Assembly (NCBI GenBank): GCA_964035545.1
Contig: OZ037768.1
Span: forward strand, 7,348,741-7,412,740
From: Bugula neritina
Lineage: Eukaryota > Animalia > Bryozoa
Length of the DNA stretch: 64,000 nt
Reading direction: 5' to 3'
Shown here: positions 9,348-25,354 of the stretch, one piece after another
Numbering within the stretch: position 1 is the stretch's first letter
Layout of the letters: every line of letters starts with the position of its first letter
The notes under the pieces: model-generated
Database searches by the model: none
The model's input: the letters and a program-made list of their open reading frames with translations, nothing else
What the model was told of the DNA's origin: nothing
Translations under genes and position numbers: made by a program

Positions 9348-9615
9348 TACTTACTCTACTATAGTACTATATAACTCTACTCTACTATACTATACTGTAT
9401 ACTATACACTACTATGCTGTACTGTACTATACTATACTATACAGTATACACTGTACTTGTACTATACACTACTATATACTATACTATATTATATTATACT
9501 ATACTGTACTATACTATACAGTATACACTGTACTTATACTACACACTACTATATACTATACTATACTATACTATACTATACTATACATTGTACTTATACT
9601 AAACGCTACTATATA
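9348..9615. repeat. (ACTAT/CTATA)n-type degenerate microsatellite, left half of the Polinton target site
   Basis: Runs of ACTAT interspersed with CACTAC/CTGTAC variants. The same repeat continues right of the element (25355-25470), including the shared CTAAACGCTACTATATA unit. Confidence 0.9.
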
Positions 9616-9797
9616 AGTAGTATAATAAGCGCCTCTACGGCTATGGAAGTAAGCATCTCGTATCGGCCAATTTGTCAACATAGCGTAGACTCTATGGCTA
9701 TGGAAATTAGCATCTCGTTAACTATGTGAGCATTGTAAGCCTTAAAGTTGACAGGTGGTAGCTATTAAATTTAGCTTACAGTGAATACACCTTTTAA
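9616..9797 (+). repeat. Left terminal inverted repeat (182 bp)
   Basis: Reverse complement of 25147-25354 except for 2 substitutions and a 26-bp indel. Contains two ~29-bp internal direct repeats (9633-9661, 9690-9718). Confidence 0.95.
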
Positions 9798-9995
9798 GCA
9801 ATTACTGGAAGGTGGATCAATGATTAGTTTAGCTGTATATCCTTGTCACTAACTTTATAAGTAACAAAATTTACTCACTGGGCTGAGAGTTATACAGTTT
9901 GCGAGTCAAAATTTGTGTGTTTTTTGGTATAAAACATCACCATTCTGAAATTTACATCATTCATCGTTATATGTTTTGAGCGCAAAGGTTAATCA

Positions 9996-10511
9996 ATGAT
10001 GACAGAAGTAGAAAATTCTCCCTTGCAAAATAAAGATCCTATATTTAATGAACAAGATGCAAATGTGGCTGAAGACGAGTTAGATGTGGCGAGAAAAGTT
10101 GTACATAATCGGAATACACTCATTAATAAAGTTTCGACCAGGAGAGATAATGCAAAGAATGACTGGAGCTTTTCAGAACTAAAAAAGAAACCTATCGCTA
10201 TTATCCTGGTAGCACTATTTTTATCAATGAATGTAATCAACATAGTTATGAGCGGTAATGGTAGCTTTTCTGGAAAGATGTTTTCAACTAATTATACTTT
10301 AGACAGAATGTTCAATAACTGCACAAAACACTTCGAAATGACTGACAATTTAAAACTAGCTGTTTGCAACACTAAAGTTCACGGGGATTTTATAACTATA
10401 CAATATTTTTTCTTGAATGGTAATATGTCTCAGAGTGATGCGTCTTCACCATCTAAGCTGTTAACAGTTTTGACTAAACACATTTTAGAAAATAATTATT
10501 ACGGAATGTAA
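9996..10511 (+). CDS. Polinton accessory ORF, 171 aa, predicted single-pass (type II) membrane protein of unknown function
   Basis: KKK followed by the hydrophobic stretch PIAIILVALFLSMNVINIVM; four N-x-S/T sequons downstream; TATAAAA at ~9928 and AATAAA at 10541. Confidence 0.7.
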   Translation: MMTEVENSPLQNKDPIFNEQDANVAEDELDVARKVVHNRNTLINKVSTRRDNAKNDWSFSELKKKPIAIILVALFLSMNVINIVMSGNGSFSGKMFSTNYTLDRMFNNCTKHFEMTDNLKLAVCNTKVHGDFITIQYFFLNGNMSQSDASSPSKLLTVLTKHILENNYYGM

Positions 10512-10728
10512 TGTTTTTCTGTATACAACTCATAGTTTATAATAAAATGTTAAATGGAAACAAAAAACATGTCTTATGGTCCAACTCTATTTGCAACTCC
10601 ATTTTTAAACTTATAACTTGACACAATTTTTCTGAAACTCAAAAAGCAGAAAAAAGATAATTAACCTTATGCTAATGATGTCTGAAACTTTGACAAAGTA
10701 AAAATTAATATTAGCAAAAATTAGGAGG

Positions 10729-11110
10729 TGACACAGCGGTTTCCAATTTAATCAATGGGAAGTAAAACATAATAAAATCTTGTATAACCTACGTAAACTG
10801 ATATAATATCGCCCAGTAATTAAACCCTAGATGGGTGGATTGTATTTAAAATTTAACAACTCAATTCCTCATTATAATTAAAAATCGGAAAATTTTTCAG
10901 CTAAGATGGATGACACGGCAATTTCTAATTTACGGATGGGAAGTGTCCTAGTTGAAGTTTAAATACATATGCAACTGATAAAACACGTATCACCTACGTA
11001 AACTGATATAATATTGCTTACGTGAGTAAACCTTAAACCGGCAGATTACAATTAAAATGTTACCACCCAACTCCCTATAATAAAAAAAGGAAAACTTTTA
11101 GTTAAGATAA
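10729..11110. repeat. Degenerate tandem duplication (~2 copies, 180-205 bp) upstream of the spliced gene, rich in TACGT motifs
   Basis: GTAT.ACCTACGTAAACTGATATAATAT at ~10782 and ~10987; TGACAC.GC..TTTC.AATTTA...ATGGGAAGT at ~10730 and ~10911. Confidence 0.75.
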
Positions 11111-11146
11111 ATTTCATTTACGTAGGAATAAATTACAAAATCTCAG

Positions 11147-11185
11147 TATATAAAAGCCTCGAAAAACTTCTATGTTTCATCGCAT
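11147..11185 (+). promoter_or_regulatory. TATA box (TATATAAAAG) with Inr-like TCAT ~30 bp downstream
   Basis: Canonical TATA 61 bp upstream of ATG 11208, which has good Kozak context (CACCATGG). Confidence 0.65.
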
Positions 11186-11207
11186 CTCAAACCATACAGC
11201 AAACACC

Positions 11208-12520
11208 ATGGGAGATTTAGTAAAGAAGTTAGAAGCTGAACTACTACAACTCAGAAGAAAAGTGGGAGAAACGAGTACTAGTTCCAGTACAGTTGAACCA
11301 CTCAAAGCCTTAAAGCCTTCTAAAAGAAAAAAGTAAGTAATAATATATTTCTTTTGGATATCTCACCACTAACCTGTTAGAATATTATTAACATGAGAAT
11401 GATTTTAGTTTACTATAGTGTTAGCTTTCTATAACTATGCTAACCACTAACCTGTTAGAATATTATTAACACGAGAATGATTTTAGTTTACTATAGTGTT
11501 AGCTTTCTATAATTATGCTAACCTTTTTTATCAGCTAAAAGTAGCATCTTATTCATTACAATAATATTATTTTAGTGAATCTAAGTCTGGTGAATCAAAG
11601 CGTAAGAAACCTGCATCAATTCCAAAGGTGGATGAGTCGACTAGCGAGCCGTCTGTATCTACCAGCGTGAGGTTAGTAGAATATCGTAAATCATCAATCA
11701 TCTGTAAGACTCACAATTAATTATATTCACTTGACAAACTATAAACAAATAAACAGACGTTTGTCGTGTAATAAATTATATTACGTAGAATAAGTTACAT
11801 ATTATAAAACATAGTAATAGATCCCTCTTTTTTAGCGCTACTACCACTCCTTCCTCTATGACATCGTCTATTCCATCCGCTAGTTCCTCTACTGGTACAA
11901 CTGTTACTACAAGTGATGATGCTGCCACTGCTGCTACCGCTGTCGATCAGAGCAAAACACCTGCAAATGAAGAAGGTTGCTATCTAGTCCCTCTTAATTA
12001 TGATCAATCACAATTATCCTACTACACTGACAATGACAAGATAATACCTACATTTAATCATTCGCGTAAATTCTTTTTTAAATCCGATGAATTTATAGGT
12101 GAATTAAAAATATACGAGTCGAAAATTCCCAACAGTGGGCCATGTTTATATGTGAAAAAATCTAAAAATCTAGAACTTTTTAAAACAAAGCTAGCTAAAA
12201 TTTTTGAAAAAAAAGTTAAGTTTTACGGTAAAAGTGAAAATGCATCATTGCTCGGATGTTATGTTGACGTGGTCAGAAACATGGAAGACGAAATTTGCGT
12301 AAATGCTGTAGTCAATGGACAACCTGTGTTATTAAATGTACAACAACTGTATGGAAAAGTGGGAAAATTAACATGCGTGTTGAGAAGCGGTGTGATAAAA
12401 AAAGTAAACGAGGACTTATTTTGGTCACTAAATGTGACCGAAATCAAACTAGACGACATATCACCGGATGAATATAATTATTTTAAACGATCGGAGCCGA
12501 TCATAAAATTTTTAGGCTGA
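11208..12520 (+). CDS. 3-exon Polinton gene (11208-11332, 11576-11671, 11836-12520; 301 aa), putative OB-fold ssDNA-binding protein
   Basis: GTAAGT..TTTTAG and GTTAGT..TTTTTTTAG introns, both phase 2, join in frame to ORF 11858-12520. N-terminal coiled coil, K-rich NLS-like segments and an S/T linker. The C-terminal beta pattern GKLTCVLRSGVIKKVNEDLFWSLNVTEIKL resembles T7 gp2.5/NCLDV-type SSBs. Function is inferred. Confidence 0.75.
11365..11523. repeat. 78-bp near-perfect tandem duplication within intron 1 of the spliced Polinton gene
   Basis: ACCACTAACCTGTTAGAATATTATTAACA...ATGCTA starts at 11365 and again at 11443. Confidence 0.9.
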
Positions 12521-12624
12521 CGGACTGACACTGACTCTCTAATATAAATATGTTGTATTTTTTGGTGATGGGGAAATATTTTATGTTGGTGAATGGAATA
12601 CTTTTATGCGTATTATTGTTTAAA

Positions 12625-13777
12625 ATATTGTTACAATATATCTCAATATATAATCAGTGAAAAGAAATTCAATACTATCTCTGCCACTATTAAACACAAA
12701 ATGTATAAAAGCGAGTTGTTAATACACAACATCTATATATTACAATCTATCTCAATATATACTCAATGAAAAGAAATTCAATACTAGCACTGCTACTATT
12801 GAATGTATAAAAGCGAGTTGTTAATATACAACATCTATATATTACAATCTATCTCAATATATACTCAGTGAAAAGAAATTCAATACTAGCACCGCTACTA
12901 TTGAATGTATAAAAGCGAGTTAATATACAACATCTATATATTACAATCTATCTCAATATATACTCAATGAAAAGAAATTCAATACTATCTCTGCCACTAT
13001 TAAACCTAAAATGTATAAAAACGAGTTGTTAATATACAATATCTATATACTTCAATCTATCTCAATATATACTCGATGAAAAGAAATTCAATACTATCTC
13101 TGCCACTATTAAACCCAAAATGTATAAAAGCGAGTTGTTAATATACAATATCTATATACTTCAATCTATTTCAATATATACTCGATGAAAAGAAATTCAA
13201 TACTATCTCTGCCACTATTAAACACAAAATGTATAAAAGCGAGTTGTTAATATACAATATCTATATACTTCAATCTATCTCAATATATACTCGATGAAAA
13301 GAAATTCAATACTATCTCTGCCACTATTAAACACAAAATGTATAAAAGCGAGTTGTTAATATACAATATCTATATACTTCAATCTATTTCAATCTATTTC
13401 AATATATCTTAATATATACTCGATGAAAAGAAATTCAATACTATCTCTGCCACTATTAAACACAAAATGTATAAAAGCGAGTTGTTAATATACAATATCT
13501 ATATACTTCAATCTATTTCAATATATACTCGATGAAAAGAAACTCAATACTATCTCTGCCACTATTAAACACAAAATGTATAAAAGCGAGTTGTTAATAT
13601 ACAATATCTATATACTTCAATCTATCTCAATATATACTCGATGCAAAGAAATTCAATACTATCTCTGCCACTATTAAACACAAAATGTATAAAAGCGAGT
13701 TGTTAATATACAATATCTATATACTTCAATCTATTTCAATCTATTTCAATATATCTTAATATATACTCGATGAAAAA
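12625..13777. repeat. Internal tandem array, ~10.3 units of ~109 bp (range 99-129)
   Basis: The anchor AAGAAATTCAATAC recurs at 12662, 12771, 12873, 12972, 13081, 13190, 13299, 13428, 13537 and 13646. Each unit contains TGTATAAAA(G/A)CGAG. Confidence 0.95.
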
Positions 13778-13985
13778 GTTTAAAACACTGTTCTTATGGC
13801 TCTGATGAAGAGTGTAGTAAACCTGACAATTCTATCTGATAATGCCACTATATGTCAAGTATATACATTTATGAGTGTATCTATTTACATATTATTAAAC
13901 AATATCTCTATTTGAAGTAATTTTCTTTGATCCTTGCATCTCTATCAAGGTGGTTAAAAGAATAATTTATACTTCAATGTTTTAG

Positions 13986-16900
13986 AGAAATTCAAGTGCC
14001 ACATATGTGGAAAAAGTTATAACCACAGGCAAAGTTTGAGCAGGCACCAAAGTATCCACAAAAAAAGATGTGATCAATGTAAACGGTTGTATGCACCGTG
14101 GAAAACAAATCACCGATGTCATAACACGGTAATTTATCTACTGAGTGATACGATACGATATGAATATGATCATACTACATATACTATCACAACAAATTCA
14201 AAGCTAACTAATCAATGGTAATCTTGGTAAATTTTAGAATACAAACTCAAACGGAGCAGAGAGAAGGTCAAACAAAAAGCCTCAAACCACATTCAGTGAT
14301 GATATTGAACGCTATCAGTACAAAGGCATTTACGAAGAGGAAACAAATGCTCTATTGAGAAAAAACTGGTCAGCTATAAGAACGTACAACAGAAAAGGGA
14401 AATATTGTAGTGTCTACAATCGATTGATAAAAGACAATGACATTATTTCAACTTTAAACAATAAAGAAGTGAAATTAATATTTCATGAACAAACATTGAA
14501 ATTCAAATGCAATGCTTCAATTGGTTTTATCCTTTTGAATCAAAATGAGGAAAAGTTGAGATACTTTCATGCTAGCATGGGTGTTGATAAACTTTTTGCC
14601 TCGCCAAAGCTAATAGAGAATTTACAAGATTTCAATCAACTTGTGAAAGAAATGACAGAAAAAGATTTCATAGAGAAAGCAACTCAAAACAGGCCAAACA
14701 CTTCGTGGAGTGTTCACAAAATAACAAATATTACATTGTATGTATTTCCTATACCAGATCACAATATCGGATGCCCTATATCTCCATCTGAGAGAACAAA
14801 ACAAAACAAAGCAATTATAACAGCTAGCACTGATACAACTGGAAGACTGTATGAAGACAACTTATGTCTATTTAGAGCTCTAGCTTACTCAAAGGGACAG
14901 CAGAGTACTTTAACACAGTCTACGAAACATTATTATGAAATGTACTTGAATGGTATGAACAAACTGAATCAAGATTTTACAGGAGTGCCTTTATCAGACC
15001 TCAGATTTGCCGAGCGAAAACTGAACTGTTCTATTAATGTGTACACCTTGGAATACAATACAGGGAAAGAAGCTAATGCAAAGCTTATGTACAGAGCCAC
15101 TACCAATTACAAACACAAACTAAACTTACATCTAGAGGAATCACATTTCAGTTGGATAAAAAACATCTCTCTTTACACAAAGTCATACAAATGTACATTT
15201 TGTAACAAGCTAATGAAATCAGTCAGAGCGTTGAATAGTCATAACACAGTATGTACAGCTGGTGAAACAAACCTTGTGTATCCCTACGGGGTGTATACTC
15301 CGTCTCGATCTATTTTCGAAAAGCTTGAAGATGTTCACATCACAGTTGATGAAAATAGACGACATTATCCGTACTTTGCTGTGTTTGATTGCGAAACGAT
15401 GATGTCTTCGATTGGTTTACCTGCAAACACAAATACAATACACTATGAAAACAAACACAAGTTGGCTTGTATAAGTTTATGCTCAAACGTATCTGGCTAT
15501 ACACAACCAGTGAATTTCATGAATTCTGGAAATGAATACGAGCTGGTTGTGAAAATGATGGATTTCCTTACAAAGCTGTCTGAAGTATGCTACCAGAGAT
15601 TGCTTGTTAGATACAATGATGTGTTTAAACAACTACGTGAAAAAGCTGACGAGTGTATCAAGAAAGAAATTGAAGCTAGTTGTAATAACAAAGCAGTGAA
15701 CAATGTCAAAAAAAAGTTTGAATCACTAGAAAGTCAACTCCACTGTTATTTGAAAGACTTGATGGTCTTGTCTTTCAACGGCGCTGTCTATGACATCCCA
15801 TTGATTCGACAACATATGCTACGGTATCTATTAGAACAAAACCAAAAAGTTTTGTTTACAGCTAAAAAAGGAAACAAATACATGTGTATTCAAACGGAAA
15901 AATTAAGATTTCTAGACGTGCTCAATTTCCTTGCTCCAGGGTTTTCGTACTCTGATTATCTAAAAGCTATGGGAGTTGAAGGGGAAAAATTCTTCTGGCC
16001 TTATGACATATTCACATCTATGGAAGTGCTAGACAGAACAGAGTTCCCCGCTCATGAAGAGTTTTACAGTAAACTGAAAGGTAAAAACATATCCGTTCAG
16101 GAGTATGAAAAATGCAAAGAAATATGGGTGCAGAAAGGAATGAAAACATTAAAAGACTTACTAGAGTACTACAATAACGAAGATGTCAGACACTTTATAC
16201 CAGCATTAGAAAAGCAAAATGAATTTTACAAATCATGCAATCTTGATTTCAAGTCAGCTATATCTATACCAGGACTAGCGATTCAATATTTATTTCAATT
16301 AAAAGACCCAGAAGCGCCAATCTTTCTGTTTGGTGATAAGTTTAAAGACATTCACCAACTTATCAAATCAAACATTAGAGGTGGTTTATCAATTGTGTTC
16401 TCAAGGTATCAAGAAGCTGGCGCAACAAAGATTAAACCTGAATACTTTGGTGATCAAGCCAAAACTACACAAACATGTGTAGGGTATGATGCGACAAGTT
16501 TATATTTGAGTTGCCTAGTGAAAGATATGCCCACAGGAGCCTTTGTAAGAAGGCGGAGAGAAAATAGCTTTAGAATAGAAAAAAGCTACTATTCGGGTGA
16601 AAAAGCTACAGTATGGCTAAAATACATGTCAAAGCTGCTCGGAGTCAAAATTCAACACAAGTTTAATAGCACCGAACGTCGAATAGGTGGACGAAACATA
16701 CCAGTCGATGGATACGCTCTGGCGAGTGATGGTAGTGAACTAGTGTTCAACTACTCAGGATGCTGGTTTCACGGACATCTATGCGACTATTGTCCAAATG
16801 GAAAGTTTAATAACAAAGAAAAAGATTTACAAAATCAAATAGACACATACAATACGCTGAAATATTTCCAAGATTTGGGTTACAGAGTCTACCATACTTG

Positions 16901-18388
16901 GGAGTGTGAATTTGATAATTTGAAAAAGGAAAACAGTGATGTCAGTGAGTTCTGCTCAAATCTGGACTTCATTGTTGATTCAAGATACGTAATATCAGAA
17001 AGCAAAATACTAGAAGAAATCAAAAATGGTTCAATGTTTGGAATGGCTGAAGTTGATATAGAAACACCTGAAGACTTGAAAACAATATTTGCTGAATATC
17101 AACCTATACAAAAAAATGTACTGATATCAAGGGATGACATAGGCCCACACATGAAACAATTTGCAGAACGAAATGGTTTACTAAAAAAGCCATCACGTAC
17201 TTTAATCAGTAGCTATTTCGGGAACAAAATCCTTTTGTCCACCCCGCTACTGCAATGGTACCTACAACACGGCTTAGTGGTTACAAAAGTATATCAAGTA
17301 ATTCAATACAAGCCATCAAAATGCTTCAAGCTGTTTGGTGAAAAGGTAATGGAGGCTAGGAGAGCTGGTGACCTCGATTCCTCAAAGAAGATTATATCGG
17401 ATTCATGCAAACTAATAGGTATTTAGTAAATATTGACATGTTTAAACATAGCACTTATTCAATGGTTATTAATATGCAAATCACTTAAGCATCTAGCAAG
17501 AGCGATAACTTTTGCATTGAATAATTACTCAATATATTTCAAAATAATCCACTTCGCTATATTTCAGGAAACTCTGCGTATGGCCGAACACTAGTCAACC
17601 TGGAGAGTCACACTGATATCATATATTGTGATGCTGAAGAGACAAACATCTCAAGACTGGTAAACAATCCTAGATTTAACAGCTTACAAGAAATTGATTC
17701 TCAACTAGTTGAAATTGAATCACGAAAAGCTAAGATTAGACTCAATGTACCAGTACAAATTGGCTTTCAAGTATTAGAGTATGCAAAGCTAGCCATGTTG
17801 AAATTCTATTACGATTTCTTGTTAAAGTTTCTATCTCTAGACAGTTTTGCTTTGATTCAAATGGACACTGACTCAATGTATTTAGCTCTAAGTGAAAAAA
17901 CTTTGTACCTAGCGGTCAAAAGTGATATGAGAAATGAATTTGAACAAGAACACACTAGTTGGATGTGTAGAGAATATTGCGATGAACACAAGTCACAATA
18001 TTTTCAATGTATGTTTAACGGGCAAACCTGGAATCCATTAGACTGTTGTAAAGCTAGTGCCAAGTTCCACAAAAGATCTTTGGGGTTGTTTCACTGCGAA
18101 AATGTCTCCCGAGGTGTTGTAGCGCTTTGCTCCAAATGTTACTATTGTTTCGGAGAAGAACCTAAATACAGTTCAAAAGGTGTCAGTAAATTGCACAACA
18201 ACTATACCGAAAAAGATTACTTCGATGTATTGATAAATCAGAAAATTGCTTACGGTACGAACAAGGGTTTTCGAGTAAAAGGTGAAGAAATATTCACGTA
18301 CGTTCAAAATCGAAAAGCTTTAAATTATTTTTACGGAAAGAGAATTGTGTCACAAGATCACGTGACAACCAAACCTACTTTACTGTAA
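13986..18388 (+). CDS. Protein-primed family B DNA polymerase (pPolB), spliced: exons 13986-14128, 14238-17418, 17568-18388 (~1380 aa) plus an unresolved short first exon
   Basis: ExoI FDCET, ExoII FNGAVYD, ExoIII YYNNED; motif A YDATSLY; motif B KLIG|NSAYG rebuilt across GT-AG intron 17419-17567; motif C MDTDS. An N-terminal C2H2 exon joins in frame via intron 14129-14237. Candidate first exon ATG 13852-13858 is uncertain. Confidence 0.92.
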
Positions 18389-18469
18389 AAAAACTGTGTT
18401 CAGTTAGCGCGTTCAGTTAATTGGTATTTCACTGTCCGGTTGATAGGTCGCATCAATCAATATTCTACG

Positions 18470-18868
18470 ATGGAAAATTTATACCTATTACAGAAAAACG
18501 CTTATAATTATATATGGTACAAGCTTTCGAAAATGAGTAGACAACATTACGTTAACTGTTGTATAACGCAAACCGTTTTGGACATGTACAATAAACATCA
18601 AAATTGGAGTGAGGAAGAAATAAATGAATTGGTCGAACTAGCCGAGGATATGTACGAGACTAACGGTTACGTTCAGTTTTGTAAAGTGGCAAAAGATTTG
18701 ACTGATCCAAATATCTCAGCTATTCGCTTAGAAACAATATTTTTCTTGTGCGTGCAAATTTGCAAAATGTATATCGAGGCTGGAGAACACTTCGCAGTGA
18801 AATATTTTATTCAACAGATCCAATGGAACTTGGGAATAGCTCTCGAGAAACAAAACAATGTACAATAG
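18470..18868 (+). CDS. Bcl-2-fold (vBcl-2-like) protein, 132 aa
   Basis: BH4-like YIWYKLSK (human BCL2 YIHYKLSQ). BH1-region FCKVAKDLTDPNISAIRLETIFFLCVQIC aligns without gaps to BCL2 [29 protein letters not shown]. No BH2 or TM tail. Reference sequences recalled from memory. Confidence 0.7.
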   Translation: MENLYLLQKNAYNYIWYKLSKMSRQHYVNCCITQTVLDMYNKHQNWSEEEINELVELAEDMYETNGYVQFCKVAKDLTDPNISAIRLETIFFLCVQICKMYIEAGEHFAVKYFIQQIQWNLGIALEKQNNVQ

Positions 18869-18894
18869 TTTATTTTGTATATAATTGTGTATAT

Positions 18895-18964
18895 TTGCCT
18901 AAACTTGCCTAAACATGCCTAAACATGCCTGAACTTGCCTAAACATGCCTGAACTTGCCTAAAT
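18895..18964. repeat. 10-bp tandem repeat (W)TGCCTRAAC x7
   Basis: TTGCCTAAAC TTGCCTAAAC ATGCCTAAAC ATGCCTGAAC TTGCCTAAAC ATGCCTGAAC TTGCCTAAAT. Confidence 0.92.
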
Positions 18965-19055
18965 CTATTTATACTTTTTTATGCCTATTAATATTTTTGT
19001 ACATTACTTGATACAATTATTTGGGAATAAACTCTCGGAATATACAGTTAACATC

Positions 19056-19706
19056 ATGAGCTTACCTTTCTACCATACATTTTCAGCGATTGTAGCTGGT
19101 CCTTCAAGGGCTGGTAAAACTCAGTGGGTAAGGAAATTGATTACCAACAGTCATACAATGATATCACCTCCACCTGAAAAAATAATATATTGTTATAGTG
19201 AGTGGCAGCCACTGTTTAGTTCATACAACAACGTTGAGTTTCATCAAGGTGTTATCGATATACAAGAATTAAACAAAAATATAAAAAACTTGATAATATT
19301 TGATGATTTAATGAGTGAAATAGATCAGAATATTGAAAACATATTTACTAAGCACAGTCACCATCGCAACATAAGCGTAATATTTATAACACAGAATCTG
19401 TTTCAAGACAACTCTCACATGAGAACAATGTCTCGAAGCGCTTCTTATGTTGTTGTATTTAAAAACTCTAGAGACGTGAACCAGATATCCTATTTGGCAA
19501 GACAAATGTTTCCTAAAAACCAGAGTAATTTTGTTGTTGAAGCGTTTCGAGACGCCACTTCTGTCCCCTTTGGGTACTTGGTTATAGACTACAGGCAAGA
19601 GACAGAAGACTATTTGCGCATTAGAACAGGTGTATTTCCGGGTGAGAAAACCTATATCTATTTGTCAAACAGAAACGCTACTTCATTACAAAGAAATGCA
19701 GCTTGA
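19056..19706 (+). CDS. Genome-packaging ATPase (A32/FtsK-HerA type)
   Basis: Walker A AGPSRAGKT, Walker B LIIFDDLM, HSHHRNISVIFITQNLF. Likely start is MSLPF at 19056 (ORF is open from 18981). Confidence 0.93.
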   Translation: MSLPFYHTFSAIVAGPSRAGKTQWVRKLITNSHTMISPPPEKIIYCYSEWQPLFSSYNNVEFHQGVIDIQELNKNIKNLIIFDDLMSEIDQNIENIFTKHSHHRNISVIFITQNLFQDNSHMRTMSRSASYVVVFKNSRDVNQISYLARQMFPKNQSNFVVEAFRDATSVPFGYLVIDYRQETEDYLRIRTGVFPGEKTYIYLSNRNATSLQRNAA

Positions 19707-19720
19707 AGCTAACATAAATC

Positions 19721-20071
19721 ATGACCGCTAGAATTAAAAAACACGCCAAGACTCTAAGTTATTTAGCTGAATGTGACAAACACAACTGTAAAGCAATCAT
19801 CAACGCAGCGGGTAGTGAACTGTTGAACTGTTTCTCAGATATTTGCTACAACGTATTAAAAGGCAAGGTGTCATTGTCACCTACTGAAGAAAACAACTTA
19901 CGTAAATACAAAAATATTTTAAGAAAGATTGCTGATAAAAAGAGTACACTGAAAACTAAAAAAACACTGGTACAGAAAGGAGGGTTTCTCTCGGCTCTTT
20001 TAGGACCACTAATAGGAAGTGTTCTAGCACCACTAGCGAAAGGAATATTCAGCGGTTTTAGAAAAAGATGA
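19721..20071 (+). CDS. Small basic Polinton core protein with adenain-type QKGG|F site and C-terminal amphipathic peptide
   Basis: 116 aa, K-rich, ends VQKGGFLSALLGPLIGSVLAPLAKGIFSGFRKR. Its position after the ATPase is typical of Polinton virion modules. Confidence 0.8.
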   Translation: MTARIKKHAKTLSYLAECDKHNCKAIINAAGSELLNCFSDICYNVLKGKVSLSPTEENNLRKYKNILRKIADKKSTLKTKKTLVQKGGFLSALLGPLIGSVLAPLAKGIFSGFRKR

Positions 20072-20793
20072 ATTCGCAAAGCGCTAGAAAATTCTTATTA
20101 GTGGATGCCGCGGATCTAAAACACAACTCATTTGTAAATGCTGATGTCAGCAAAAATAATGATTATCAACAAGTCGAGAGAAACAAACCTTTGATTACTA
20201 AAGAACTATTTGCCGTAGATAAGCTAATGAGTGAAATCTTAAATGACAACACGCTATCAGAAAATGAGAAAGTAACTGCTTATAACAACGCGTTGACTAA
20301 TTATCAAGAGTTAAAAACTACTACTTATAAGAAAATATCTAGCACAAGGTTGCCTACTTTATCAAAGAATAGTGAACCACAACTAAAAGAAACAGAAAGT
20401 CTTACATCTTATAACCCACTACTAGCTATCCCTCAAAGATTTAAAACAAAGGCGAGTCAACTTTGGGATATACTGAAAAAAGATGGTAAAGTTTCTGTAA
20501 ATGATGCGGGGCAGGTAACTATTAACGGCAACCAACTACGCGGAAGCAATTTATCTGATCTATTAAATCTTGCGGTTAATAGTCAACTGAAAGGTAAAAC
20601 ATTGGAAGGGTGGAAAGAATTTAGACAAGTATTAATTGATTACAATGTACCCAAACTACTCATTAATCAAAACGTTATCGAAGAGAAATCTAAAAGTAGA
20701 AGAGAGTCTAGTAAATTGTCATCAGGCGAGTGGGATCCATACGATGGCAAGGCGAAAACGAAAAAAGCAAAATCCAGACTCCAGCTATACTGA
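20068..20793 (+). CDS. Conserved Polinton hypothetical protein, 241 aa
   Basis: Long intact ORF with an ATGA overlap on the previous gene. Motifs NDAGQVTING..GSNLSDLL and GWKEF..L...NVP resemble a recurrent Polinton ORF (from memory). Confidence 0.75.
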   Translation: MNSQSARKFLLVDAADLKHNSFVNADVSKNNDYQQVERNKPLITKELFAVDKLMSEILNDNTLSENEKVTAYNNALTNYQELKTTTYKKISSTRLPTLSKNSEPQLKETESLTSYNPLLAIPQRFKTKASQLWDILKKDGKVSVNDAGQVTINGNQLRGSNLSDLLNLAVNSQLKGKTLEGWKEFRQVLIDYNVPKLLINQNVIEEKSKSRRESSKLSSGEWDPYDGKAKTKKAKSRLQLY

Positions 20794-21871
20794 TAAACTA
20801 ATTCGAGACACCTATTTCAATATTTCTAAACCAGCCGGATTTGGTAGTAAAGCAAAGTTATACAAATCATTAAAAGGCAAAGTAAGCAAGGGTGCAATTG
20901 ATAGATGGCTTGAAAAAACAGACAGCTATAACCTACATAAACCTTTGCGAAAAAACTTTCCCAGACGAAAGTATATTGTATCAGGTATTAATGCCATGTG
21001 GCAAATTGATTTAACAGATCTCCAACAGTTTTCATCCGAAAATAATGGATTCAAGTATATACTATTAAGCATTGACACATTCAGTCGTAAAGCCTACGGT
21101 GTACCACTCAAAACTAAATCTGGTTTAGAAGTGAGTAGAGCTATGAGGGAGATTATAGAAAACGAAAACAACAACACTCCACCAGAAATGATTTTATCAG
21201 ATAGAGGCAAAGAATTCTTTAACCCTCAATTTAAAGCATTAATGAAAGAATATAACATAAACCACTTTTCATCCAACAATCAAGAAATTAAAGCATCCAT
21301 GGTTGAAAGACTGCAAAGAACACTAAAGGCTAAATTGTTTAAATATTTTACTCATCAAAACAGTCACAGATATCTTGACATTCTCAATGATCTAATATCA
21401 TCATACAATAACTCGAAACACTCGGCTCATAACTCAACACCTAATGATGTGACAGTTAACAATCAAGAAGAAATTTGGCATAGACTATACACAGATAGTC
21501 AGAGTGGTCAAACTAACAAACTAAAATACAATGTTGGAGATCTCGTTAGAATATCGAAATATAGTACAGTATTTAAAAAAGGATACCTTCCTTCTTGGAG
21601 CGAAGAAATCTTTACCATAGCGAAAATCCACACTACTAATCCTCCAGTGTATTCTCTCGCGGATGACAGCGGTGATCAGCTAGAAGGAACATGGTATGAA
21701 CCGGAATTACAGAAAGTAAACACCAAGAGCAACACCTATAAAATAGAGTCAATTGTTGGTCAGCGTACTGTGAATGGTAAAAAACAATTTCTTGTAAGGT
21801 GGGCTGGATATCCGCCAAGTTTTGACTTGTATGTTGATAAAAGAGATGTAATTTTTAACTATAAGAATTAG
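20744..21871 (+). CDS. RVE (retroviral-like DDE) integrase with C-terminal chromodomain
   Basis: WQIDLTD, ILSDRGKEF and MVERLQRT supply the D-D-E triad; KKGYLPSWSEEIF; chromodomain YKIESIVGQRTVNGKKQFLVRWAGY. Likely start is MARRKRKK at 20744. Confidence 0.95.
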   Translation: MARRKRKKQNPDSSYTDKLIRDTYFNISKPAGFGSKAKLYKSLKGKVSKGAIDRWLEKTDSYNLHKPLRKNFPRRKYIVSGINAMWQIDLTDLQQFSSENNGFKYILLSIDTFSRKAYGVPLKTKSGLEVSRAMREIIENENNNTPPEMILSDRGKEFFNPQFKALMKEYNINHFSSNNQEIKASMVERLQRTLKAKLFKYFTHQNSHRYLDILNDLISSYNNSKHSAHNSTPNDVTVNNQEEIWHRLYTDSQSGQTNKLKYNVGDLVRISKYSTVFKKGYLPSWSEEIFTIAKIHTTNPPVYSLADDSGDQLEGTWYEPELQKVNTKSNTYKIESIVGQRTVNGKKQFLVRWAGYPPSFDLYVDKRDVIFNYKN

Positions 21872-21904
21872 ATAATAAACTTATATGTTGTCACTCTTAC
21901 AAAG

Positions 21905-22675
21905 ATGCGCGTTGTTTTACCTAGTAATGCTTCGTTGAAGCATTTTCCAAAAAATAGTCTTTCAGTATACACAGTTCAATTGCCTCAAAGTTTAGATTTT
22001 ACGGATGGCTCTTACGAAATCGGATTGAGTGATATACAATTTTATAAATCATGGTTCAATGTGAAACAGTGCAGCATAACCTTAAAAGTAAATGAAGCTG
22101 AAGAAACAGTGCATCTAGATGACGGTTACTACAAATCAGATAAAAAGCTAATACAATCTATCAATCAAGCAATAAATGACCAGTGTTTAAATCTGAAAGT
22201 AAAATTTAATTTCTATTACAACGATGTCAATAAGAATTTTTATGTCATTGCTGAAAATGTTAGCGGTTGCTCTATAGACATCACATACTCACCATCTCTT
22301 GAGAAAATACTTAATGTACAGGAAGAAAAAATGGAGATAAAATCAATGACCGATGGCACAATTTTGGTCAAGTACAATACTCCAATAAGATTACATACAA
22401 TATTTAACCTGATGGTGTATACAGATGTAGCAGAATCTAGTATTGTTGGAGATACTCAGGCTCAACTACTAAGAGTTGTAGGAGTCGAGGATGGTCATTG
22501 GAGGTTGCAGTCCACTAACTTTAACAATGTACAGTACTGCAAAATAAATAAAACGCATGTTTCGAGTGTATCAATTTATATATACACGGATTACGGTGAA
22601 AGAGTACCATTCACGCATGGACGTACAGTGGTAACGGTAGATATTCGAAAAGTTAAACCTATAAACCTAATATGA
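21905..22675 (+). CDS. Minor capsid protein / penton (single jelly roll, PX)
   Basis: N-terminal LPSNAS..FP.N....YTVQLP..L....YEIGL and C-terminal VYTDVAE.SIVGD....LLR, typical of Polinton penton. Confidence 0.88.
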   Translation: MRVVLPSNASLKHFPKNSLSVYTVQLPQSLDFTDGSYEIGLSDIQFYKSWFNVKQCSITLKVNEAEETVHLDDGYYKSDKKLIQSINQAINDQCLNLKVKFNFYYNDVNKNFYVIAENVSGCSIDITYSPSLEKILNVQEEKMEIKSMTDGTILVKYNTPIRLHTIFNLMVYTDVAESSIVGDTQAQLLRVVGVEDGHWRLQSTNFNNVQYCKINKTHVSSVSIYIYTDYGERVPFTHGRTVVTVDIRKVKPINLI

Positions 22676-23103
22676 GAATAATTCCATTCGATTGTGATGC
22701 CGCATCAAATAGCTATAGACAGTTATATGAACAATCAGGAAATGGAATGATTCCAATATTTTCAGGAGAAAAATATCAAACAGGATACGGTTTAGGGAGC
22801 ATATTTGGTAACATACTCAAAGCAGCATTGCCTGTTGTAAAACAAGGTGTAAAAAGTTTAGGAAAGACAGCAATAAATACTGGTCTAAACATTGCCAGAG
22901 ATAGTTTATCCGGTAAACCATTCAGAGAGTCAATTAAAGATAACGTCAACAGCGCGGCTGGAGAGGTTATTACTAAAGGTATTACATACGTCACCAACAG
23001 AAATCGAAATAAAAAAAGGAAGCGTCAGACTAACAGAGTTACTTCTTCCAAGTCTTCAAAGGTGAAAAGACGTAGGGTTACTAAACGCGATATCTTTTCA
23101 TAG
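22672..23103 (+). CDS. Core/membrane-lytic precursor protein (QxGxG adenain sites, amphipathic helix, R/K-rich tail)
   Basis: QSGNG and QTGYG|LGSIFGNILKAALPVVKQGVKSLGK; basic C-terminus RNRNKKRKRQ..KRRRVTKRDIFS. Confidence 0.8.
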   Translation: MRIIPFDCDAASNSYRQLYEQSGNGMIPIFSGEKYQTGYGLGSIFGNILKAALPVVKQGVKSLGKTAINTGLNIARDSLSGKPFRESIKDNVNSAAGEVITKGITYVTNRNRNKKRKRQTNRVTSSKSSKVKRRRVTKRDIFS

Positions 23104-23114
23104 AATACTATACT

Positions 23115-24425
23115 ATGAGTTTCATAATGGAACATAGCTGCCTCGCTGGCAAACCCGAATTAGATTTATTTTCTACACTACCTACTCAAGCATCAATCGA
23201 AGAAGGATATCACGTAGAACATATGCCCACAACCTCATTGAATGATGAGGGACCTATAAAGTTCTCAATCTCTGGTGATTCGAACAACTACCTTGACCTC
23301 AGTTCAAGCTATCTATTATTAGAGGTGAAAATAACAAAAGCTGACGGTACGGATCTCGATGCTCAAGGTGATGCGGCTCCTATAAACCTTTTGGGTCACA
23401 CATTATTTCAACAAGTAGAAATTATGCTAAATGATGTAGTTATTTCCAACGCTTCTAATCTCTACCACTACAGAGCTCTTATAGAAACTTTACTAAGTTA
23501 CTCCGATGAAGCTAAAAAGTCACAACTATCAATGTCACTCTACTCAAAGGATACACCCGGAAAAATGGATCACATTGGTGGTGATAATGAAGGCTTGGAA
23601 GCTAGAAGGCGAATTACGGGGCAGAGTAAAACTGTGCAATTAATTGTTAGACCGCACGCTGACATATTCTTTCAAAGGCGATTCATTTTAAACGGAGTAG
23701 ACATGAAATTAAAATTTGTGAGGAATCACAACAGCTTAGTGCTAATGGCTGGTGAAAACTCTACTTGCAAACTAAAAATCCTAAACGCATCTTTTTTCCT
23801 TCGAAAAGTTAAAATCAATAGCGGAATACAATTAAAGCACATTGAAAATTTAGACAAGAAACTATTACCAGCCGTTTATCCTATCAGAAGAGTTGATATG
23901 AAGTCATTCAATATCGCATTGGGTTCACTGTCTTGGAACGAAGAAAATTTATTTCACGGTATTCTGCCTAAGAGGATAGTTATAGGTATTGTAAACGCTG
24001 GTGCATTCGAAGGCGCGTACAATTTGAATCCTTTCAACTTTCAGCACAAACATTTAAAATATACAAACCTAGTCGTTGACGGGAAACAAGTACCTCAGAA
24101 GGCATTGGTTTCAGACTACACAAATCATAATACTCTAAGAAACTATTTTACGCTCTTGGAATCAACGGGAAAGGTGTTCAACAATGGCGGAATAGATATA
24201 GATAGAGAGGAATACGAGAAAGGTTACAGTCTAATGGCCTTTGATTTAACTCCTGACCTAGATTTGAGCACTTGCTTTCATTTGATGAAGCGAGGAACAA
24301 TAAGATTAGAGCTAAAGTTTTCTCAGGCTCTTGACACACCCGTTAATGTGATTGTCTACTCCGAATTTGACTCTGGTATAAAAATTGATAAGAATAGAGC
24401 GGTACTTACAAATTTCTACGCGTGA
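23115..24425 (+). CDS. Major capsid protein (double jelly roll, PY)
   Basis: 436 aa; ELDLF..PTQ.SI, YRALIETLLSY, PKRIVIG, NPFNFQH, FDLTPD, G.IRLELKF...L. Confidence 0.93.
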   Translation: MSFIMEHSCLAGKPELDLFSTLPTQASIEEGYHVEHMPTTSLNDEGPIKFSISGDSNNYLDLSSSYLLLEVKITKADGTDLDAQGDAAPINLLGHTLFQQVEIMLNDVVISNASNLYHYRALIETLLSYSDEAKKSQLSMSLYSKDTPGKMDHIGGDNEGLEARRRITGQSKTVQLIVRPHADIFFQRRFILNGVDMKLKFVRNHNSLVLMAGENSTCKLKILNASFFLRKVKINSGIQLKHIENLDKKLLPAVYPIRRVDMKSFNIALGSLSWNEENLFHGILPKRIVIGIVNAGAFEGAYNLNPFNFQHKHLKYTNLVVDGKQVPQKALVSDYTNHNTLRNYFTLLESTGKVFNNGGIDIDREEYEKGYSLMAFDLTPDLDLSTCFHLMKRGTIRLELKFSQALDTPVNVIVYSEFDSGIKIDKNRAVLTNFYA

Positions 24426-24964
24426 TGAATTCTAAAGAAATATATTCCATTCTTGAGAACGATGAGTGGGTGAAAAAGATGAACTTCATCGGTGTATTTC
24501 CAATCGATAGAATACCTAGTAGTAGTTTGACGGATTATCCTTGCTGTGGAGTTGTAAACACTAAACCTCACAATCATCCGGGAGAGCACTGGGTGATGTT
24601 TCTAAAGACAGAAAATAACACAGGAGTTTATTTCGACTCTTTTGGAAGTGGTCTTTACAACATGCCAGAGGTTGCGGCTATATTTGATTCAGTAGACTCT
24701 TGGCAATTTAGTAGCACTCAGCTACAATCTGTATTTTCTACAGTTTGCGGACAATACTGTATTTTTGTGTTAACGCATTTAGCCAGAGGTTTCTCACTAG
24801 AACACATTATATCTTTAATAAATGATTGTTGTGATACATACGCGAATGATGCTTTTATATTTAATTACATTAATCAAAAATATAGTAATTTTTTAAATAA
24901 AGAACTAGAAATTGTAGACTTACCTTTTATTTTTGAACAAGCTTCTTATCCTGTTAAAATTTAA
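24425..24964 (+). CDS. Adenain-like (Ulp1/C5-type) cysteine maturation protease
   Basis: GEHWV (His), YFDSFG (Asp), QLQSVFSTVCGQYC (Gln/Cys). The ATG overlaps the MCP stop (TGATG); AATAAA at ~25000. Confidence 0.93.
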   Translation: MNSKEIYSILENDEWVKKMNFIGVFPIDRIPSSSLTDYPCCGVVNTKPHNHPGEHWVMFLKTENNTGVYFDSFGSGLYNMPEVAAIFDSVDSWQFSSTQLQSVFSTVCGQYCIFVLTHLARGFSLEHIISLINDCCDTYANDAFIFNYINQKYSNFLNKELEIVDLPFIFEQASYPVKI

Positions 24965-25146
24965 AGCTGTAATATTCTATTATGACATTTTTTCAAGAAA
25001 ATAAACTCATGGTGAAAAGAAATCTCTTTCTGGTTATTGAATATTATACGGAGTGTAGAATTTACCAAAGTGACAACAGTGATATAACGAGGGTAACTAA
25101 TCATAGATCAATGTTTTAGTACGTGAGATTCTGACTACGTAGTTAG

Positions 25147-25354
25147 TTAAAAGGTGTATTCACCGTAAGCTAAATTTAATAGCTACCACCTGTCAACTTT
25201 AAGGCTTACAATGCTAATTCATCAATAACAAATACAATGCTCACATAGTTAACGAGATGCTAATTTCCATAGCCATAGAGTCTACACTATGTTGACAAAT
25301 TGGCCGATACGAGATGCTTACTTCCATAGCCGTAGAGGCGCTTATTATACTACT
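25147..25354 (-). repeat. Right terminal inverted repeat (208 bp)
   Basis: Reverse complement of the left TIR, with an extra 26 bp bounded by TACAATGCT direct repeats. Confidence 0.95.

What the first reader, a model, noticed from the sequence alone, without database searches (positions are those of the whole stretch)
9616..25354. Intact endogenous Polinton-virus with an adenovirus-like division of labour: spliced early block (SSB, pPolB, vBcl-2) and compact late virion block
Seen: perfect ends, TSD, near-identical TIRs, no frameshift or premature stop once introns are removed, and all genes co-oriented. The left half (9996-18868) has separately promoted, partly intron-containing genes. The right half (19056-24964) is intronless and overlapping. 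Established: adenoviruses have E2A DBP, E2B pTP/pol, E1B-19K (vBcl-2) and a late unit processed by adenain. Inference: this is a recently integrated, possibly reactivatable virus with an analogous early/late programme, richer than the standard Polinton core.
Basis: partly seen in the sequence, partly recalled or inferred. Interest (0 to 1): 0.85.

Follow-up and report, generated by a model that had tools for sequence, protein, structure and literature searches.

The report
Intact Polinton element in a bryozoan genome
This is a well-preserved copy of a known kind of virus-like jumping element (a Polinton, also called Maverick) in a bryozoan genome; it is ordinary in gene content, its polymerase gene is unusually split by introns, and the proposed SSB and Bcl-2 genes are not supported.

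Summary
Window 9616-25354 is a 15,739-bp Polinton/Maverick element. Its ends read (AGT)2...(ACT)2. The terminal inverted repeats match at 179 of 181 bases plus one 26-nt indel. TATATA lies on both sides, and every long ORF is on the + strand. The host is Bugula neritina or a very close relative.

Gene order after the polymerase (ATPase, two small ORFs, integrase, penton-position ORF, small basic ORF, major capsid, protease) matches the published vertebrate Maverick core. I found no breaks in these genes.

The polymerase gene has at least two GT-AG introns. One splits motif B; the exons on either side align with adjacent residues of an uninterrupted relative. Of 150 relatives, 7 end at that same point. 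The right block is 99% coding and the left 68%.

The labels "SSB" and "vBcl-2" have no support: no Pfam, PHROGs or PDB match. An early/late programme is untested.

Verdict: a new member of a known kind, of moderate interest because published animal Maverick core genes are intronless.

The parts
9610..9615 (.). Left copy of the putative 6-bp target-site duplication (TATATA).
   Evidence: It lies in a microsatellite. TATATA occurs 4 and 5 times in the 300-nt flanks.
9616..9796 (+). Left terminal inverted repeat (181 nt). It starts AGTAGT and holds two 23-nt subterminal direct repeats.
   Evidence: The (AGT)2 end motif is as described for vertebrate Mavericks.
9996..10511 (+). Accessory ORF-A, 171 aa, with one strong hydrophobic segment (a membrane-protein candidate). 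Function unknown.
   Evidence: Kyte-Doolittle maximum 2.57. TATAAAA at 9928. The N-terminal part resembles the N-terminus of Bugula neritina model P0008 (E 2e-6). No Pfam or PHROGs family.
11172..11336 (+). 54-aa ORF rich in basic residues. It is either a separate small gene or a possible upstream exon of the next gene (tentative).
   Evidence: TATATAAAA at 11147. No similarity to relatives.
11858..12520 (+). It is a conserved protein of unknown function with a core of about 170 aa.
   Evidence: 6 homologues at 45-97% identity, two of them Bugula neritina proteins. No Pfam, PHROGs or PDB hit. TATAAAA at 11803.
12514..13906 (+). Tandem array of about 10 units of 109 bp (some 129 bp or doubled), each unit carrying a TATAAAA. 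It lies between acc220 and the polymerase gene.
   Evidence: A sibling protein (P0010) reads into a like sequence.
13988..18388 (+). [quoted passage not shown] Its exons are 13988-14129 (C2H2 zinc finger), 14238-17418 and 17568-18388. Its introns are 14130-14237 and 17419-17567. The initiator exon is not resolved.
18470..18868 (+). A lineage-specific ORF of unknown function.
   Evidence: No Pfam, PHROGs or PDB hit. No C-terminal hydrophobic anchor.
18875..18963 (+). About seven tandem 10-bp repeats preceded by a TATATAA (18878), ending just upstream of the ATPase ORF. A candidate promoter or leader of the compact block (inference).
18981..19706 (+). Packaging ATPase (FtsK/A32/IVa2-like) with Walker A and B motifs. 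A second in-frame ATG lies at 19056.
   Evidence: Pfam Adeno_IVa2 22.0 bits against cut-off 21. Sequence. No PDB hit.
19721..20071 (+). ORF116: small, basic (net +16), with a hydrophobic C-terminal part. It sits in the position of 'PM' of vertebrate Mavericks.
   Evidence: The match to PM is positional only.
20068..20793 (+). ORF241, in the position of 'PZ' of vertebrate Mavericks. Function unknown.
   Evidence: The match to PZ is positional only.
20744..21871 (+). Retrovirus-like integrase with a C-terminal chromodomain (the ORF opens at 20636; the start is taken at the ATG at 20744, the second of two in-frame ATGs).
   Evidence: Pfam rve 53.8 bits and Chromo 25.7 bits, both above cut-off. 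PDB chromodomains and retroviral integrases.
21905..22675 (+). 256-aa ORF in the position of the minor capsid (penton, PX) protein. A single ORF with 0 interruptions.
   Evidence: Position is one gene away from the capsid gene, as described in the literature. No family or PDB hit.
22672..23103 (+). ORF143: very basic (net +19) with a Lys/Arg-rich tail. It sits in the position of 'PW'. A core or membrane-active virion protein candidate (inference).
   Evidence: Position. pX-like accessory virion proteins are described.
23115..24425 (+). Major capsid protein (PY family), 436 aa. A single ORF with 0 interruptions.
   Evidence: 971 homologues at E <= 0.001. The 10 best are 433-437 aa at 99-100% coverage. 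Named ones are 'F54H12.2-like' from bryozoan, scallop and crinoid genomes. Only a weak Capsid_N match of 14.6 bits. No PDB hit by profile.
24425..24964 (+). Adenain-like cysteine protease, 179 aa (the ORF opens at 24422).
   Evidence: Pfam Peptidase_C5 15.2 bits, below the cut-off of 21.3. The best PDB hit is adenoviral proteinase, E 0.21, in register. Candidate catalytic His, Asp and Gln...Cys are visible; assigning them as the active-site residues of this protease clan is recalled.
25148..25354 (-). Right terminal inverted repeat (207 nt, including a 26-nt extra segment). It ends ACTACT.
25355..25360 (.). Right copy of the putative target-site duplication (TATATA).

Best explanation
Window 9616-25354 is a structurally intact, integrated Polinton/Maverick element (adintovirus-like) in the genome of Bugula neritina or a very close relative.

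Shown here:
- terminal inverted repeats with the (AGT)2/(ACT)2 end motif, and a 6-bp flanking repeat;
- a full-length protein-primed B-family polymerase gene with an N-terminal zinc-finger exon and two spliceosomal-type introns;
- an rve integrase with a chromodomain;
- an IVa2/FtsK-like ATPase;
- a capsid-family protein;
- an adenain-like protease;
- gene order as in the published Maverick core.

Inferred from established knowledge of Polintons:
- the polymerase copies the element by protein priming at the inverted-repeat ends;
- the integrase inserts it and makes the 6-bp duplication;
- the capsid, penton, ATPase and protease genes could form and mature particles.

Inferred from motifs only:
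- the left part (ORF-A, acc220, polymerase) uses separate TATA-type promoters and host splicing;
- the 6-kb right block is read from one or a few long transcripts starting near 18878.

The three accessory ORFs (ORF-A, acc220, ORF142) are lineage-specific genes of unknown function. They are not demonstrable SSB or Bcl-2 homologues.
For: Ends, TIRs and TSD. The end motif and gene order match the passages read.

Polymerase:
- 8026 relatives at E <= 0.001, the best at 49-50% identity.
- Pfam DNA_pol_B_2 scores above cut-off in 3 of 6 relatives scanned, and zf-C2H2 in 4 of 6.
- The window's zinc-finger exon scores 26.5 bits against a cut-off of 25.2.
- The last exon aligns without gaps to residues 1067-1338 (the end) of P0012, and the main exon's match stops at residue 1066.
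- GT...AG borders are visible.
- Of 150 relatives, 7 end within 12 residues after the same motif-B glycine and 56 run through it.

Other core genes:
- Integrase: rve 53.8 bits and Chromo 25.7 bits.
- ATPase: Adeno_IVa2 22 bits against a cut-off of 21.
- Capsid: 971 homologues, with full-length collinear coverage.
- Protease: two independent weak matches to adenain, in register.

Host and siblings:
- Bugula neritina proteins appear among the hits.
- P0004 matches 21 of 21 and 52 of 56 aligned positions.
- A metazoan GIT gene lies on the same contig.
- Siblings of two accessory ORFs exist at 97% identity.

Compactness: coding fraction 0.990 against 0.676.

TATA-like motifs lie 24-103 nt upstream of four first ATGs (ORF-A, the 54-aa ORF, acc220 and the ATPase) and in every unit of the array that ends about 300 nt before the first recognised polymerase exon.
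Against: - The window's own polymerase exons do not reach any Pfam polymerase family at E <= 1 or any PDB sequence. The assignment rests on relatives and on motifs, whose names are recalled.
- The capsid protein has no significant Pfam or PDB match, even as a 21-sequence profile.
- The penton-position ORF has none either. Both names rest on family size, position and the literature.
- The protease matches are below threshold.
- The TSD lies in low-complexity DNA.
- The polymerase start codon is not found.
- No expression data exist here.
- No nucleotide-level sibling comparison was made.
- The nearest capsid homologue in the protein collection is only 77% identical.
- None of 10 window proteins is in the collection.
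Confidence: 0.88

Rival explanations
1. The element runs an adenovirus-like temporal programme. An early spliced block encodes a single-stranded-DNA-binding protein (11858-12520), the polymerase and a Bcl-2-like anti-apoptotic protein (18440-18868). A late block is made from one processed transcript.
For: - The structural split is real: introns and long spacers on the left, 99% coding on the right.
- TATA-like motifs precede the left genes and the right block.
- The adintovirus paper states that Bcl2 and IAP homologues occur in some adintoviruses, so such a gene would have precedent.
- acc220 has basic, nuclear-localisation-like stretches upstream.
Against: - Neither ORF has any Pfam, PHROGs or PDB match, singly or as a profile.
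- ORF142 has only 4 hits, all at least 87% identical over the aligned part. It lacks a C-terminal hydrophobic anchor and has no + strand TATA-like motif upstream of its ATG.
- The integrase sits inside the 'late' block.
- Published Maverick modules split after PZ, not after the polymerase.
- No timing data exist.
- The fold could not be tested.
Confidence: 0.07
2. The left-hand ORFs are a cargo or accessory region of the kind already described at the ends of Mavericks. The intron/compactness contrast reflects the origin and age of the genes, not a temporal programme. The polymerase introns are a lineage peculiarity.
For: - Passages in the nematode Maverick preprint describe a 2-5 kb region next to a TIR holding intron-bearing cargo genes, beside intronless core genes.
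- Vertebrate Mavericks have accessory regions flanking the core.
- ORF-A and acc220 have homologues only in bryozoan-type sources.
Against: - GC and GC3 of the accessory ORFs do not differ from the core genes: GC3 is 0.29-0.39 against 0.27-0.36.
- No host-gene paralogue was identified.
- The introns that are verified are in the core polymerase gene, not in the cargo.
- This reading is compatible with the best explanation rather than exclusive of it.
Confidence: 0.45
3. The copy is an inactive genomic fossil that merely looks intact. The interruptions in the polymerase gene are insertions rather than introns.
For: - The two TIR arms differ by 2 mismatches and a 26-nt indel.
- The polymerase start is unresolved.
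- A rearranged derivative exists in Bugula neritina.
- In vertebrates 96% of loci are degraded.
Against: - Both interruptions have GT...AG borders and keep the frame.
- The flanking exons align with adjacent residues of an uninterrupted relative.
- The same position ends 7 of 150 relatives.
- About 11 kb of ORFs show 0 stops or frameshifts.
Confidence: 0.08

Closest known systems
Intact Mavericks of vertebrates (Barreat and Katzourakis 2021, PMC8097293; passages and section 7 read)
   Same: - The order polymerase, ATPase, PM, PZ, then integrase, minor capsid, PW, major capsid, protease.
- The (AGT)2//(ACT)2 end motif.
- TIRs and a 6-bp TSD.
- Size within their range of 12.7-24.6 kb.
- Accessory region(s) at the flank.
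   Different: - All genes lie on one strand; they report this for Xenopus tropicalis only.
- The polymerase carries at least two introns, whereas their intact elements are intronless.
- An extra ORF (ORF142) lies between the polymerase and the ATPase.
- Homology of PM, PZ and PW is positional here and was not tested.
Adintoviruses / Adintoviridae (Starrett et al. 2021, PMC8502044, passages and section 8 read; bioRxiv 10.1101/2024.03.25.586562, passages). A passage in PMC12166617 says the family was renamed Eupolintoviridae.
   Same: - Animal-associated.
- A PolB with a long N-terminal extension.
- An rve integrase with a C-terminal chromodomain.
- An adenain-like protease and a packaging ATPase.
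- Hexon- and penton-type genes.
- Small basic virion-accessory ORFs.
- Accessory genes upstream of PolB.
- Zinc-finger genes are noted in some members.
   Different: - This copy is integrated, with host flanks.
- The OTU-like domain that defines their PolB was not detectable by Pfam here.
- No LxCxE 'Oncoid' motif: 0 of 15 ORF pieces.
- No detectable Bcl2 or IAP homologue.
Nematode Mavericks with cargo genes (Widen et al., bioRxiv 10.1101/2022.07.12.499685, passages read)
   Same: Intron-free virion and integrase genes, together with a TIR-proximal region of lineage-specific, possibly intron-bearing genes.
   Different: - There all core genes, the polymerase included, are called intronless.
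- Their cargo (proteases, kinases) has no counterpart here.
Adenovirus (E2B polymerase, IVa2, adenain, hexon and penton). What is said of its transcription is recalled, not from a call.
   Same: - Weak but named matches to Adeno_IVa2 and to adenain.
- A protein-primed polymerase family.
- Inverted terminal repeats.
   Different: - An integrase and a TSD are present.
- No match to the adenovirus DNA-binding protein or to E1B-19K/Bcl-2.
- The genome is half the size.
- No evidence of a tripartite-leader type of late unit (not examined before the coat genes, by rule).

Membership tests
Polinton/Maverick (polintovirus, adintovirus-like) | [quoted passage not shown] | tested here: met
   - 8026 relatives at E <= 0.001.
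- DNA_pol_B_2 scores above cut-off in 3 of 6 relatives.
- The gene is collinear with a 1338-aa relative to its last residue.
- The window protein itself has no Pfam polymerase hit.
Polinton/Maverick (polintovirus, adintovirus-like) | Retrovirus-like (rve) integrase; in adintoviruses with a C-terminal chromodomain | tested here: met
   rve 53.8 bits (cut-off 32.6) and Chromo 25.7 bits (cut-off 25.1). PDB hits.
Polinton/Maverick (polintovirus, adintovirus-like) | Terminal inverted repeats with a conserved end motif | tested here: met
   179 of 181 positions match, plus a 26-nt indel. The ends read AGTAGT...ACTACT, the commonest motif.
Polinton/Maverick (polintovirus, adintovirus-like) | 6-bp target-site duplication | tested here: inconclusive
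   TATATA is on both sides, but it lies in a microsatellite where TATATA occurs 4-5 times per 300 nt.
Polinton/Maverick (polintovirus, adintovirus-like) | Double jelly-roll major capsid protein and single jelly-roll penton | tested here: inconclusive
   - The 436-aa protein belongs to a large animal-genome family of 971 hits.
- Its only family match is Capsid_N at 14.6 bits, below cut-off.
- There is no PDB hit by profile.
- The penton is assigned by position only.
- The fold test was impossible.
Polinton/Maverick (polintovirus, adintovirus-like) | FtsK/A32/IVa2-type packaging ATPase | tested here: met
   Adeno_IVa2 22.0 bits against a cut-off of 21, so borderline. Walker A and B motifs are readable.
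Polinton/Maverick (polintovirus, adintovirus-like) | Adenain-like (Ulp1/C5) cysteine protease | tested here: inconclusive
   Peptidase_C5 15.2 bits, below the cut-off of 21.3. Adenain 1avp is the best PDB hit at E 0.21. Candidate catalytic residues are present; that motif is recalled.
Adintovirus PolB class | N-terminal OTU-like domain in PolB | tested here: inconclusive
   There is no Pfam OTU hit in the window protein or in 6 relatives. The paper detected the domain by structure-based methods, which were not available here.
   0 Pfam families at E <= 0.1. The single-sequence PDB search gave 1 unrelated hit at E 0.97, and the profile gave 0. PHROGs gave 0.
   The highest 19-residue hydropathy is 1.43, at residues 82-100 of 132. 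The C-terminus is polar.
   0 Pfam families for the window ORF, and no family shared by more than 2 of 7 members. The PDB single and profile searches returned only chance-level hits, E 1.2 and 1.7.
No binding data exist.
Adenovirus-type early/late transcription programme | Temporal separation of replication and virion transcripts | not testable with these tools
   No expression data. Only the distributions of TATA-like and AATAAA motifs are available.

The most novel reading that the evidence does not exclude
A bryozoan lineage of animal Polintons carries conserved spliceosomal introns inside its core replication gene. One of them splits polymerase motif B and is shared with relatives as distant as about 32-60% identity. 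Upstream of the gene lies a tandem array of about ten TATA-box units. The virion and integrase genes stay intron-free.

If so, replication-gene expression in this lineage depends on host nuclear splicing and may be regulated apart from particle genes. The published descriptions of intact animal Mavericks that I read call all core genes intronless.
Probability: 0.35. Interest if true: 0.55.

Novelty: new member of a known kind. Interest (0 to 1): 0.35.

Why it matters
Intact Polintons are the best candidates for still-living members of the virus group thought to be ancestral to adenoviruses and many other eukaryotic DNA viruses. Bryozoans are not mentioned with Polintons in the library I could search.

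The ordinary part is one more intact copy with the standard core. It adds a host phylum and little else.

The useful part is the polymerase gene. Verified introns whose position is shared with relatives show that a core gene of such an element can be host-spliced. This bears on how these elements are expressed in the nucleus. It also bears on how annotation pipelines that assume intronless genes may miscall intact copies as broken.

The report also removes two attractive but unsupported gene names, SSB and vBcl-2.

Tried and rejected
Searches that gave nothing:
- PDB sequence searches found nothing for the polymerase main ORF.
- For ORF142 and acc220, single-sequence and profile PDB searches returned at most one chance-level hit, E 0.97-1.7.
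- The capsid profile of 21 sequences found nothing in PDB. The ATPase and the penton-position ORF returned only unrelated chance-level hits, E 0.6-1.9.
- Pfam on the 21 capsid-family members gave only 1 of 21 with a weak Capsid_N match.
- PHROGs on 10 ORFs gave 1 of 10 with a weak, unnamed hit.
- Pfam on the 7 acc220 members showed no family in more than 2 of 7.
- The exact look-up of 10 window proteins found 0 of 10 in the collection.
- A self-BLAST of the element against the rest of the window gave 0 HSPs.
- tRNA and Rfam scans of the window found 0 and 0.

Ideas tested and dropped:
- A three-exon model for acc220 (11172-11332, 11576-11671, 11836-12520) fits GT-AG borders and phase. Its two upstream pieces show no similarity to the Bugula neritina relative P0007, and a TATAAAA at 11803 suggests the ORF may stand alone. 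I keep the model as tentative only.
- TACGTA looked clustered upstream of acc220 but is not enriched overall: 10 found, 9.98 expected.
- AATAAA is not enriched overall: 179 found, 181 expected. One copy follows the integrase stop and one follows the protease stop, but seven lie inside the last four genes, so no transcript map can be drawn.
- I could not resolve the polymerase initiator exon.
- I rejected contamination or a free virus, because microsatellite flanks and a host GIT gene lie on the same contig.

Literature limits:
- Searches for F54H12.2 (0 papers), Bugula with Polinton (0) and bryozoa with Maverick (1 irrelevant paper) gave nothing usable.
- Two papers were not held. What I say of Kapitonov and Jurka 2006 is therefore second-hand.
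- Supplements were closed. Supplementary Figs S1 and S2 of PMC8502044, which list the Bcl2 and IAP homologues, and the supplementary files of PMC8097293 and PMC4028283 may bear on whether ORF142-like or acc220-like genes are already catalogued.

Full report
**What is there.** Inverted repeats bound a 15,739-bp segment, 9616-25354. Aligned from the stated ends, the arms match over 113 nt with 1 mismatch, then the right arm has 26 extra nt, then 68 nt match with 1 mismatch. The element begins AGTAGT and ends ACTACT. In a passage I read, this is the commonest end motif of vertebrate Mavericks.

TATATA lies on both sides. The insertion sits in a (TACTA)n and 22-nt-period microsatellite, where TATATA occurs 4 and 5 times in the 300-nt flanks. 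The 6-bp duplication therefore fits but proves little. No other copy or fragment lies in the window (0 HSPs).

**Host.** The few hits to two accessory ORFs include Bugula neritina proteins. One of them, a 74-aa model (P0004), matches 21 of 21 positions of ORF142 and 52 of 56 aligned positions of the capsid protein. B. neritina, or something very close to it, therefore carries a near-identical, rearranged derivative. A metazoan GIT gene (ArfGap 56.7 bits, GIT_SHD 38.7 bits; 2 of 10 flank ORFs had hits) lies on the minus strand at about 33-37 kb. I do not take the contig for human. Because the host is an animal, I treated the element as a provirus-like element of animals and kept to the bars that apply to one.

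**Core genes.**
- All 13 ORFs of at least 100 aa inside the element are on the + strand.
- The integrase has rve (53.8 bits) and Chromo (25.7 bits) domains, both above cut-off. It also hits chromodomains and retroviral integrases in PDB.
- The ATPase reaches Adeno_IVa2 at 22.0 bits against a cut-off of 21.
- The protease has two weak matches to adenain, in register: Pfam 15.2 bits, below cut-off, and PDB 1avp at E 0.21.
- The 436-aa protein has 971 homologues at E <= 0.001. The 10 best are 433-437 aa at 99-100% coverage. The named ones are 'F54H12.2-like' proteins of a bryozoan (Watersipora), a scallop and a crinoid.
- That 436-aa protein has no significant Pfam or PDB match, even as a 21-sequence profile. 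This agrees with the literature, where this family (PY) was tied to capsid proteins only by profile-profile methods.
- The 256-aa ORF one gene upstream sits where the penton (PX) is usually found. It has no match of its own.
- The order ATPase, ORF116, ORF241, integrase, 256-aa ORF, ORF143, capsid, protease is the order atp, pm, pz, int, minor capsid, pw, major capsid, protease of vertebrate Mavericks. For pm, pz and pw this correspondence is positional only.
- I count 0 stops and 0 frameshifts in these genes. The two capsid-position genes have 0 interruptions.

**Polymerase.** The 1023-codon ORF has 8026 relatives at E <= 0.001, the best at 49-50% identity and typically 1300-1400 aa long. Of 6 relatives scanned, 3 reach Pfam DNA_pol_B_2 and 4 reach zf-C2H2 at their N-terminus. 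The window's own pieces reach no polymerase family and no PDB sequence.

The ORF stops inside motif B. The DNA there reads G|GT...AG|GA. The next piece (17570-18385), searched on its own, aligns without a gap to residues 1067-1338, the very end of the uninterrupted relative P0012. The main ORF's match ends at residue 1066, so the exons on either side of the 149-nt interruption align with adjacent residues of the relative.

Among the 150 listed relatives, 56 carry motif B unbroken, 7 end within 12 residues after its glycine, and 87 do neither because they are fragments or diverge from the motif. An end at that one place in 7 proteins is what ORF callers produce at a shared intron.

Upstream, the frame is open to 14238, just after an AG. 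A separate 47-codon piece (13988-14129, followed by GT) is a C2H2 zinc finger (26.5 bits, cut-off 25.2), as in the relatives. The homology of the main exon starts about 55 residues after the fingers of P0017. I could not find the initiator exon. I searched the model exon by exon and left the joined step out, as the operators ordered.

**Accessory ORFs.**
- acc220 (11858-12520) is a real, conserved gene. It has 6 homologues at 45-97% identity, with 33 invariant columns in a core of about 170 aa. It matches nothing named.
- ORF142 has only 4 hits, all at least 87% identical over the aligned part, and no named match. It has no C-terminal anchor and no + strand TATA-like motif upstream of its ATG.
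- ORF-A has one strong hydrophobic segment. Its N-terminus resembles that of a B. neritina model.

I put it at under 10%.

**Layout and signals.** The coding fraction is 0.676 for 9996-18868 and 0.990 for 18981-24964. TATAWAW on the + strand lies at these places:
- 9928, which is 68 nt before ORF-A;
- 11147, before the 54-aa ORF;
- 11803, which is 55 nt before acc220;
- once in each of 10 units of the 109-bp array;
- 18878, which is 103 nt before the ATPase ORF and is followed by seven 10-bp repeats.

None lies on the + strand from 13766 to 18476. The motif is common in this window (271 found against 199 +/- 17 expected), so this is suggestive only. AATAAA gives no clear transcript map. By rule, I did not look for splice sites in or before the coat genes.

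**Comparison with what is known.** The element meets the tested defining features of Polintons/Mavericks and resembles adintoviruses in its chromodomain integrase, long N-terminal PolB extension and small basic virion ORFs. Accessory regions at the flanks are already described, and they are intron-bearing in nematodes.

The feature that differs from the descriptions I read is introns in a core gene. Intact vertebrate Mavericks are reported as intronless, 'in agreement with' the original description, and nematode core genes are called intronless. Introns of another kind (introners) are reported in related proviruses of dinoflagellates. I found no paper linking Bugula or bryozoans with Polintons; these searches cover only the held library.

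**Age and activity.**
- Two mismatches in 181 nt and one indel between the arms, 0 breaks in about 11 kb of ORFs, and siblings at 97% identity all fit a young or selected copy.
- It is my rough inference, not a computation, that neutral decay matching the arm divergence would probably have broken some ORF by now.
- The nearest capsid homologue in the collection is only 77% identical, and none of 10 window proteins is in it. Sibling sampling is therefore thin.

**Verdict.** This is a new member of a known kind. Its one uncommon trait worth following is the spliced polymerase gene, whose intron position is shared with relatives.

Noticed in passing
window 12514-13906: A tandem array of about 10 units of 109 bp lies between acc220 and the polymerase gene. 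Each unit carries a TATAAAA on the + strand. A sibling protein (P0010) reads into a similar sequence, so the array is not private to this copy.
   Followed up: partly
window 18875-18963: Seven tandem 10-bp repeats follow a TATATAA and end 18 nt before the ATPase ORF. They could be a promoter or leader of the compact block.
   Followed up: no
window 9639-9661 and 9696-9718 (mirrored in the right arm): Two 23-nt direct repeats, 21 of 23 identical and 57 nt apart, lie inside each terminal inverted repeat (read). They are candidate binding sites for the element's own proteins.
   Followed up: no
window 13766-18476: The polymerase gene region has no TATAWAW on the + strand over 4.7 kb. Exons and introns 14238-18388 hold only one AATAAA. 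The window average is about 2 and 1.4 per kb per strand respectively.
   Followed up: no
window about 16700-16800 (polymerase main exon): A Cys/His-rich stretch lies between polymerase motifs A and B. In the relative P0013 the matching stretch gives a weak Pfam Vsr endonuclease hit of 20.5 bits, below the cut-off of 27. This may be an inserted nuclease-like module.
   Followed up: no
window about 14850-14900 (polymerase N-terminal part): A conserved Cys-containing motif is shared with P0011 and P0012. It lies where adintovirus PolB is said to have an OTU-like domain. Pfam OTU was not hit.
   Followed up: partly
protein P0004 (Bugula neritina model): This 74-aa gene model joins the end of an ORF142 homologue to an internal part of a capsid homologue. 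It is either a deletion derivative of a sibling copy or a gene-model artefact.
   Followed up: partly
protein P0008 (Bugula neritina model): This gene model joins an ORF-A-like N-terminus, with its membrane segment, to an acc220-like core. It hints at alternative splicing between the two accessory genes, or at an annotation merge.
   Followed up: no
window 9365-9586 and 25349-25465: The host insertion site is a (TACTA)n microsatellite with a 22-nt and 77-nt higher-order period. A 21-nt string is shared by the two flanks.
   Followed up: partly
window 33237-36649, minus strand: Exons of a host GIT-type gene (ArfGap and GIT Spa2-homology domains) lie about 8 kb to the right of the element.
   Followed up: no
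window 10775-11017 and 11362-11517: A 38-nt pair 205 nt apart, each copy with a TACGTA core, lies upstream of the TATA at 11147. A 78-nt tandem duplication lies just downstream of the 54-aa ORF. TACGTA is not enriched overall.
   Followed up: partly
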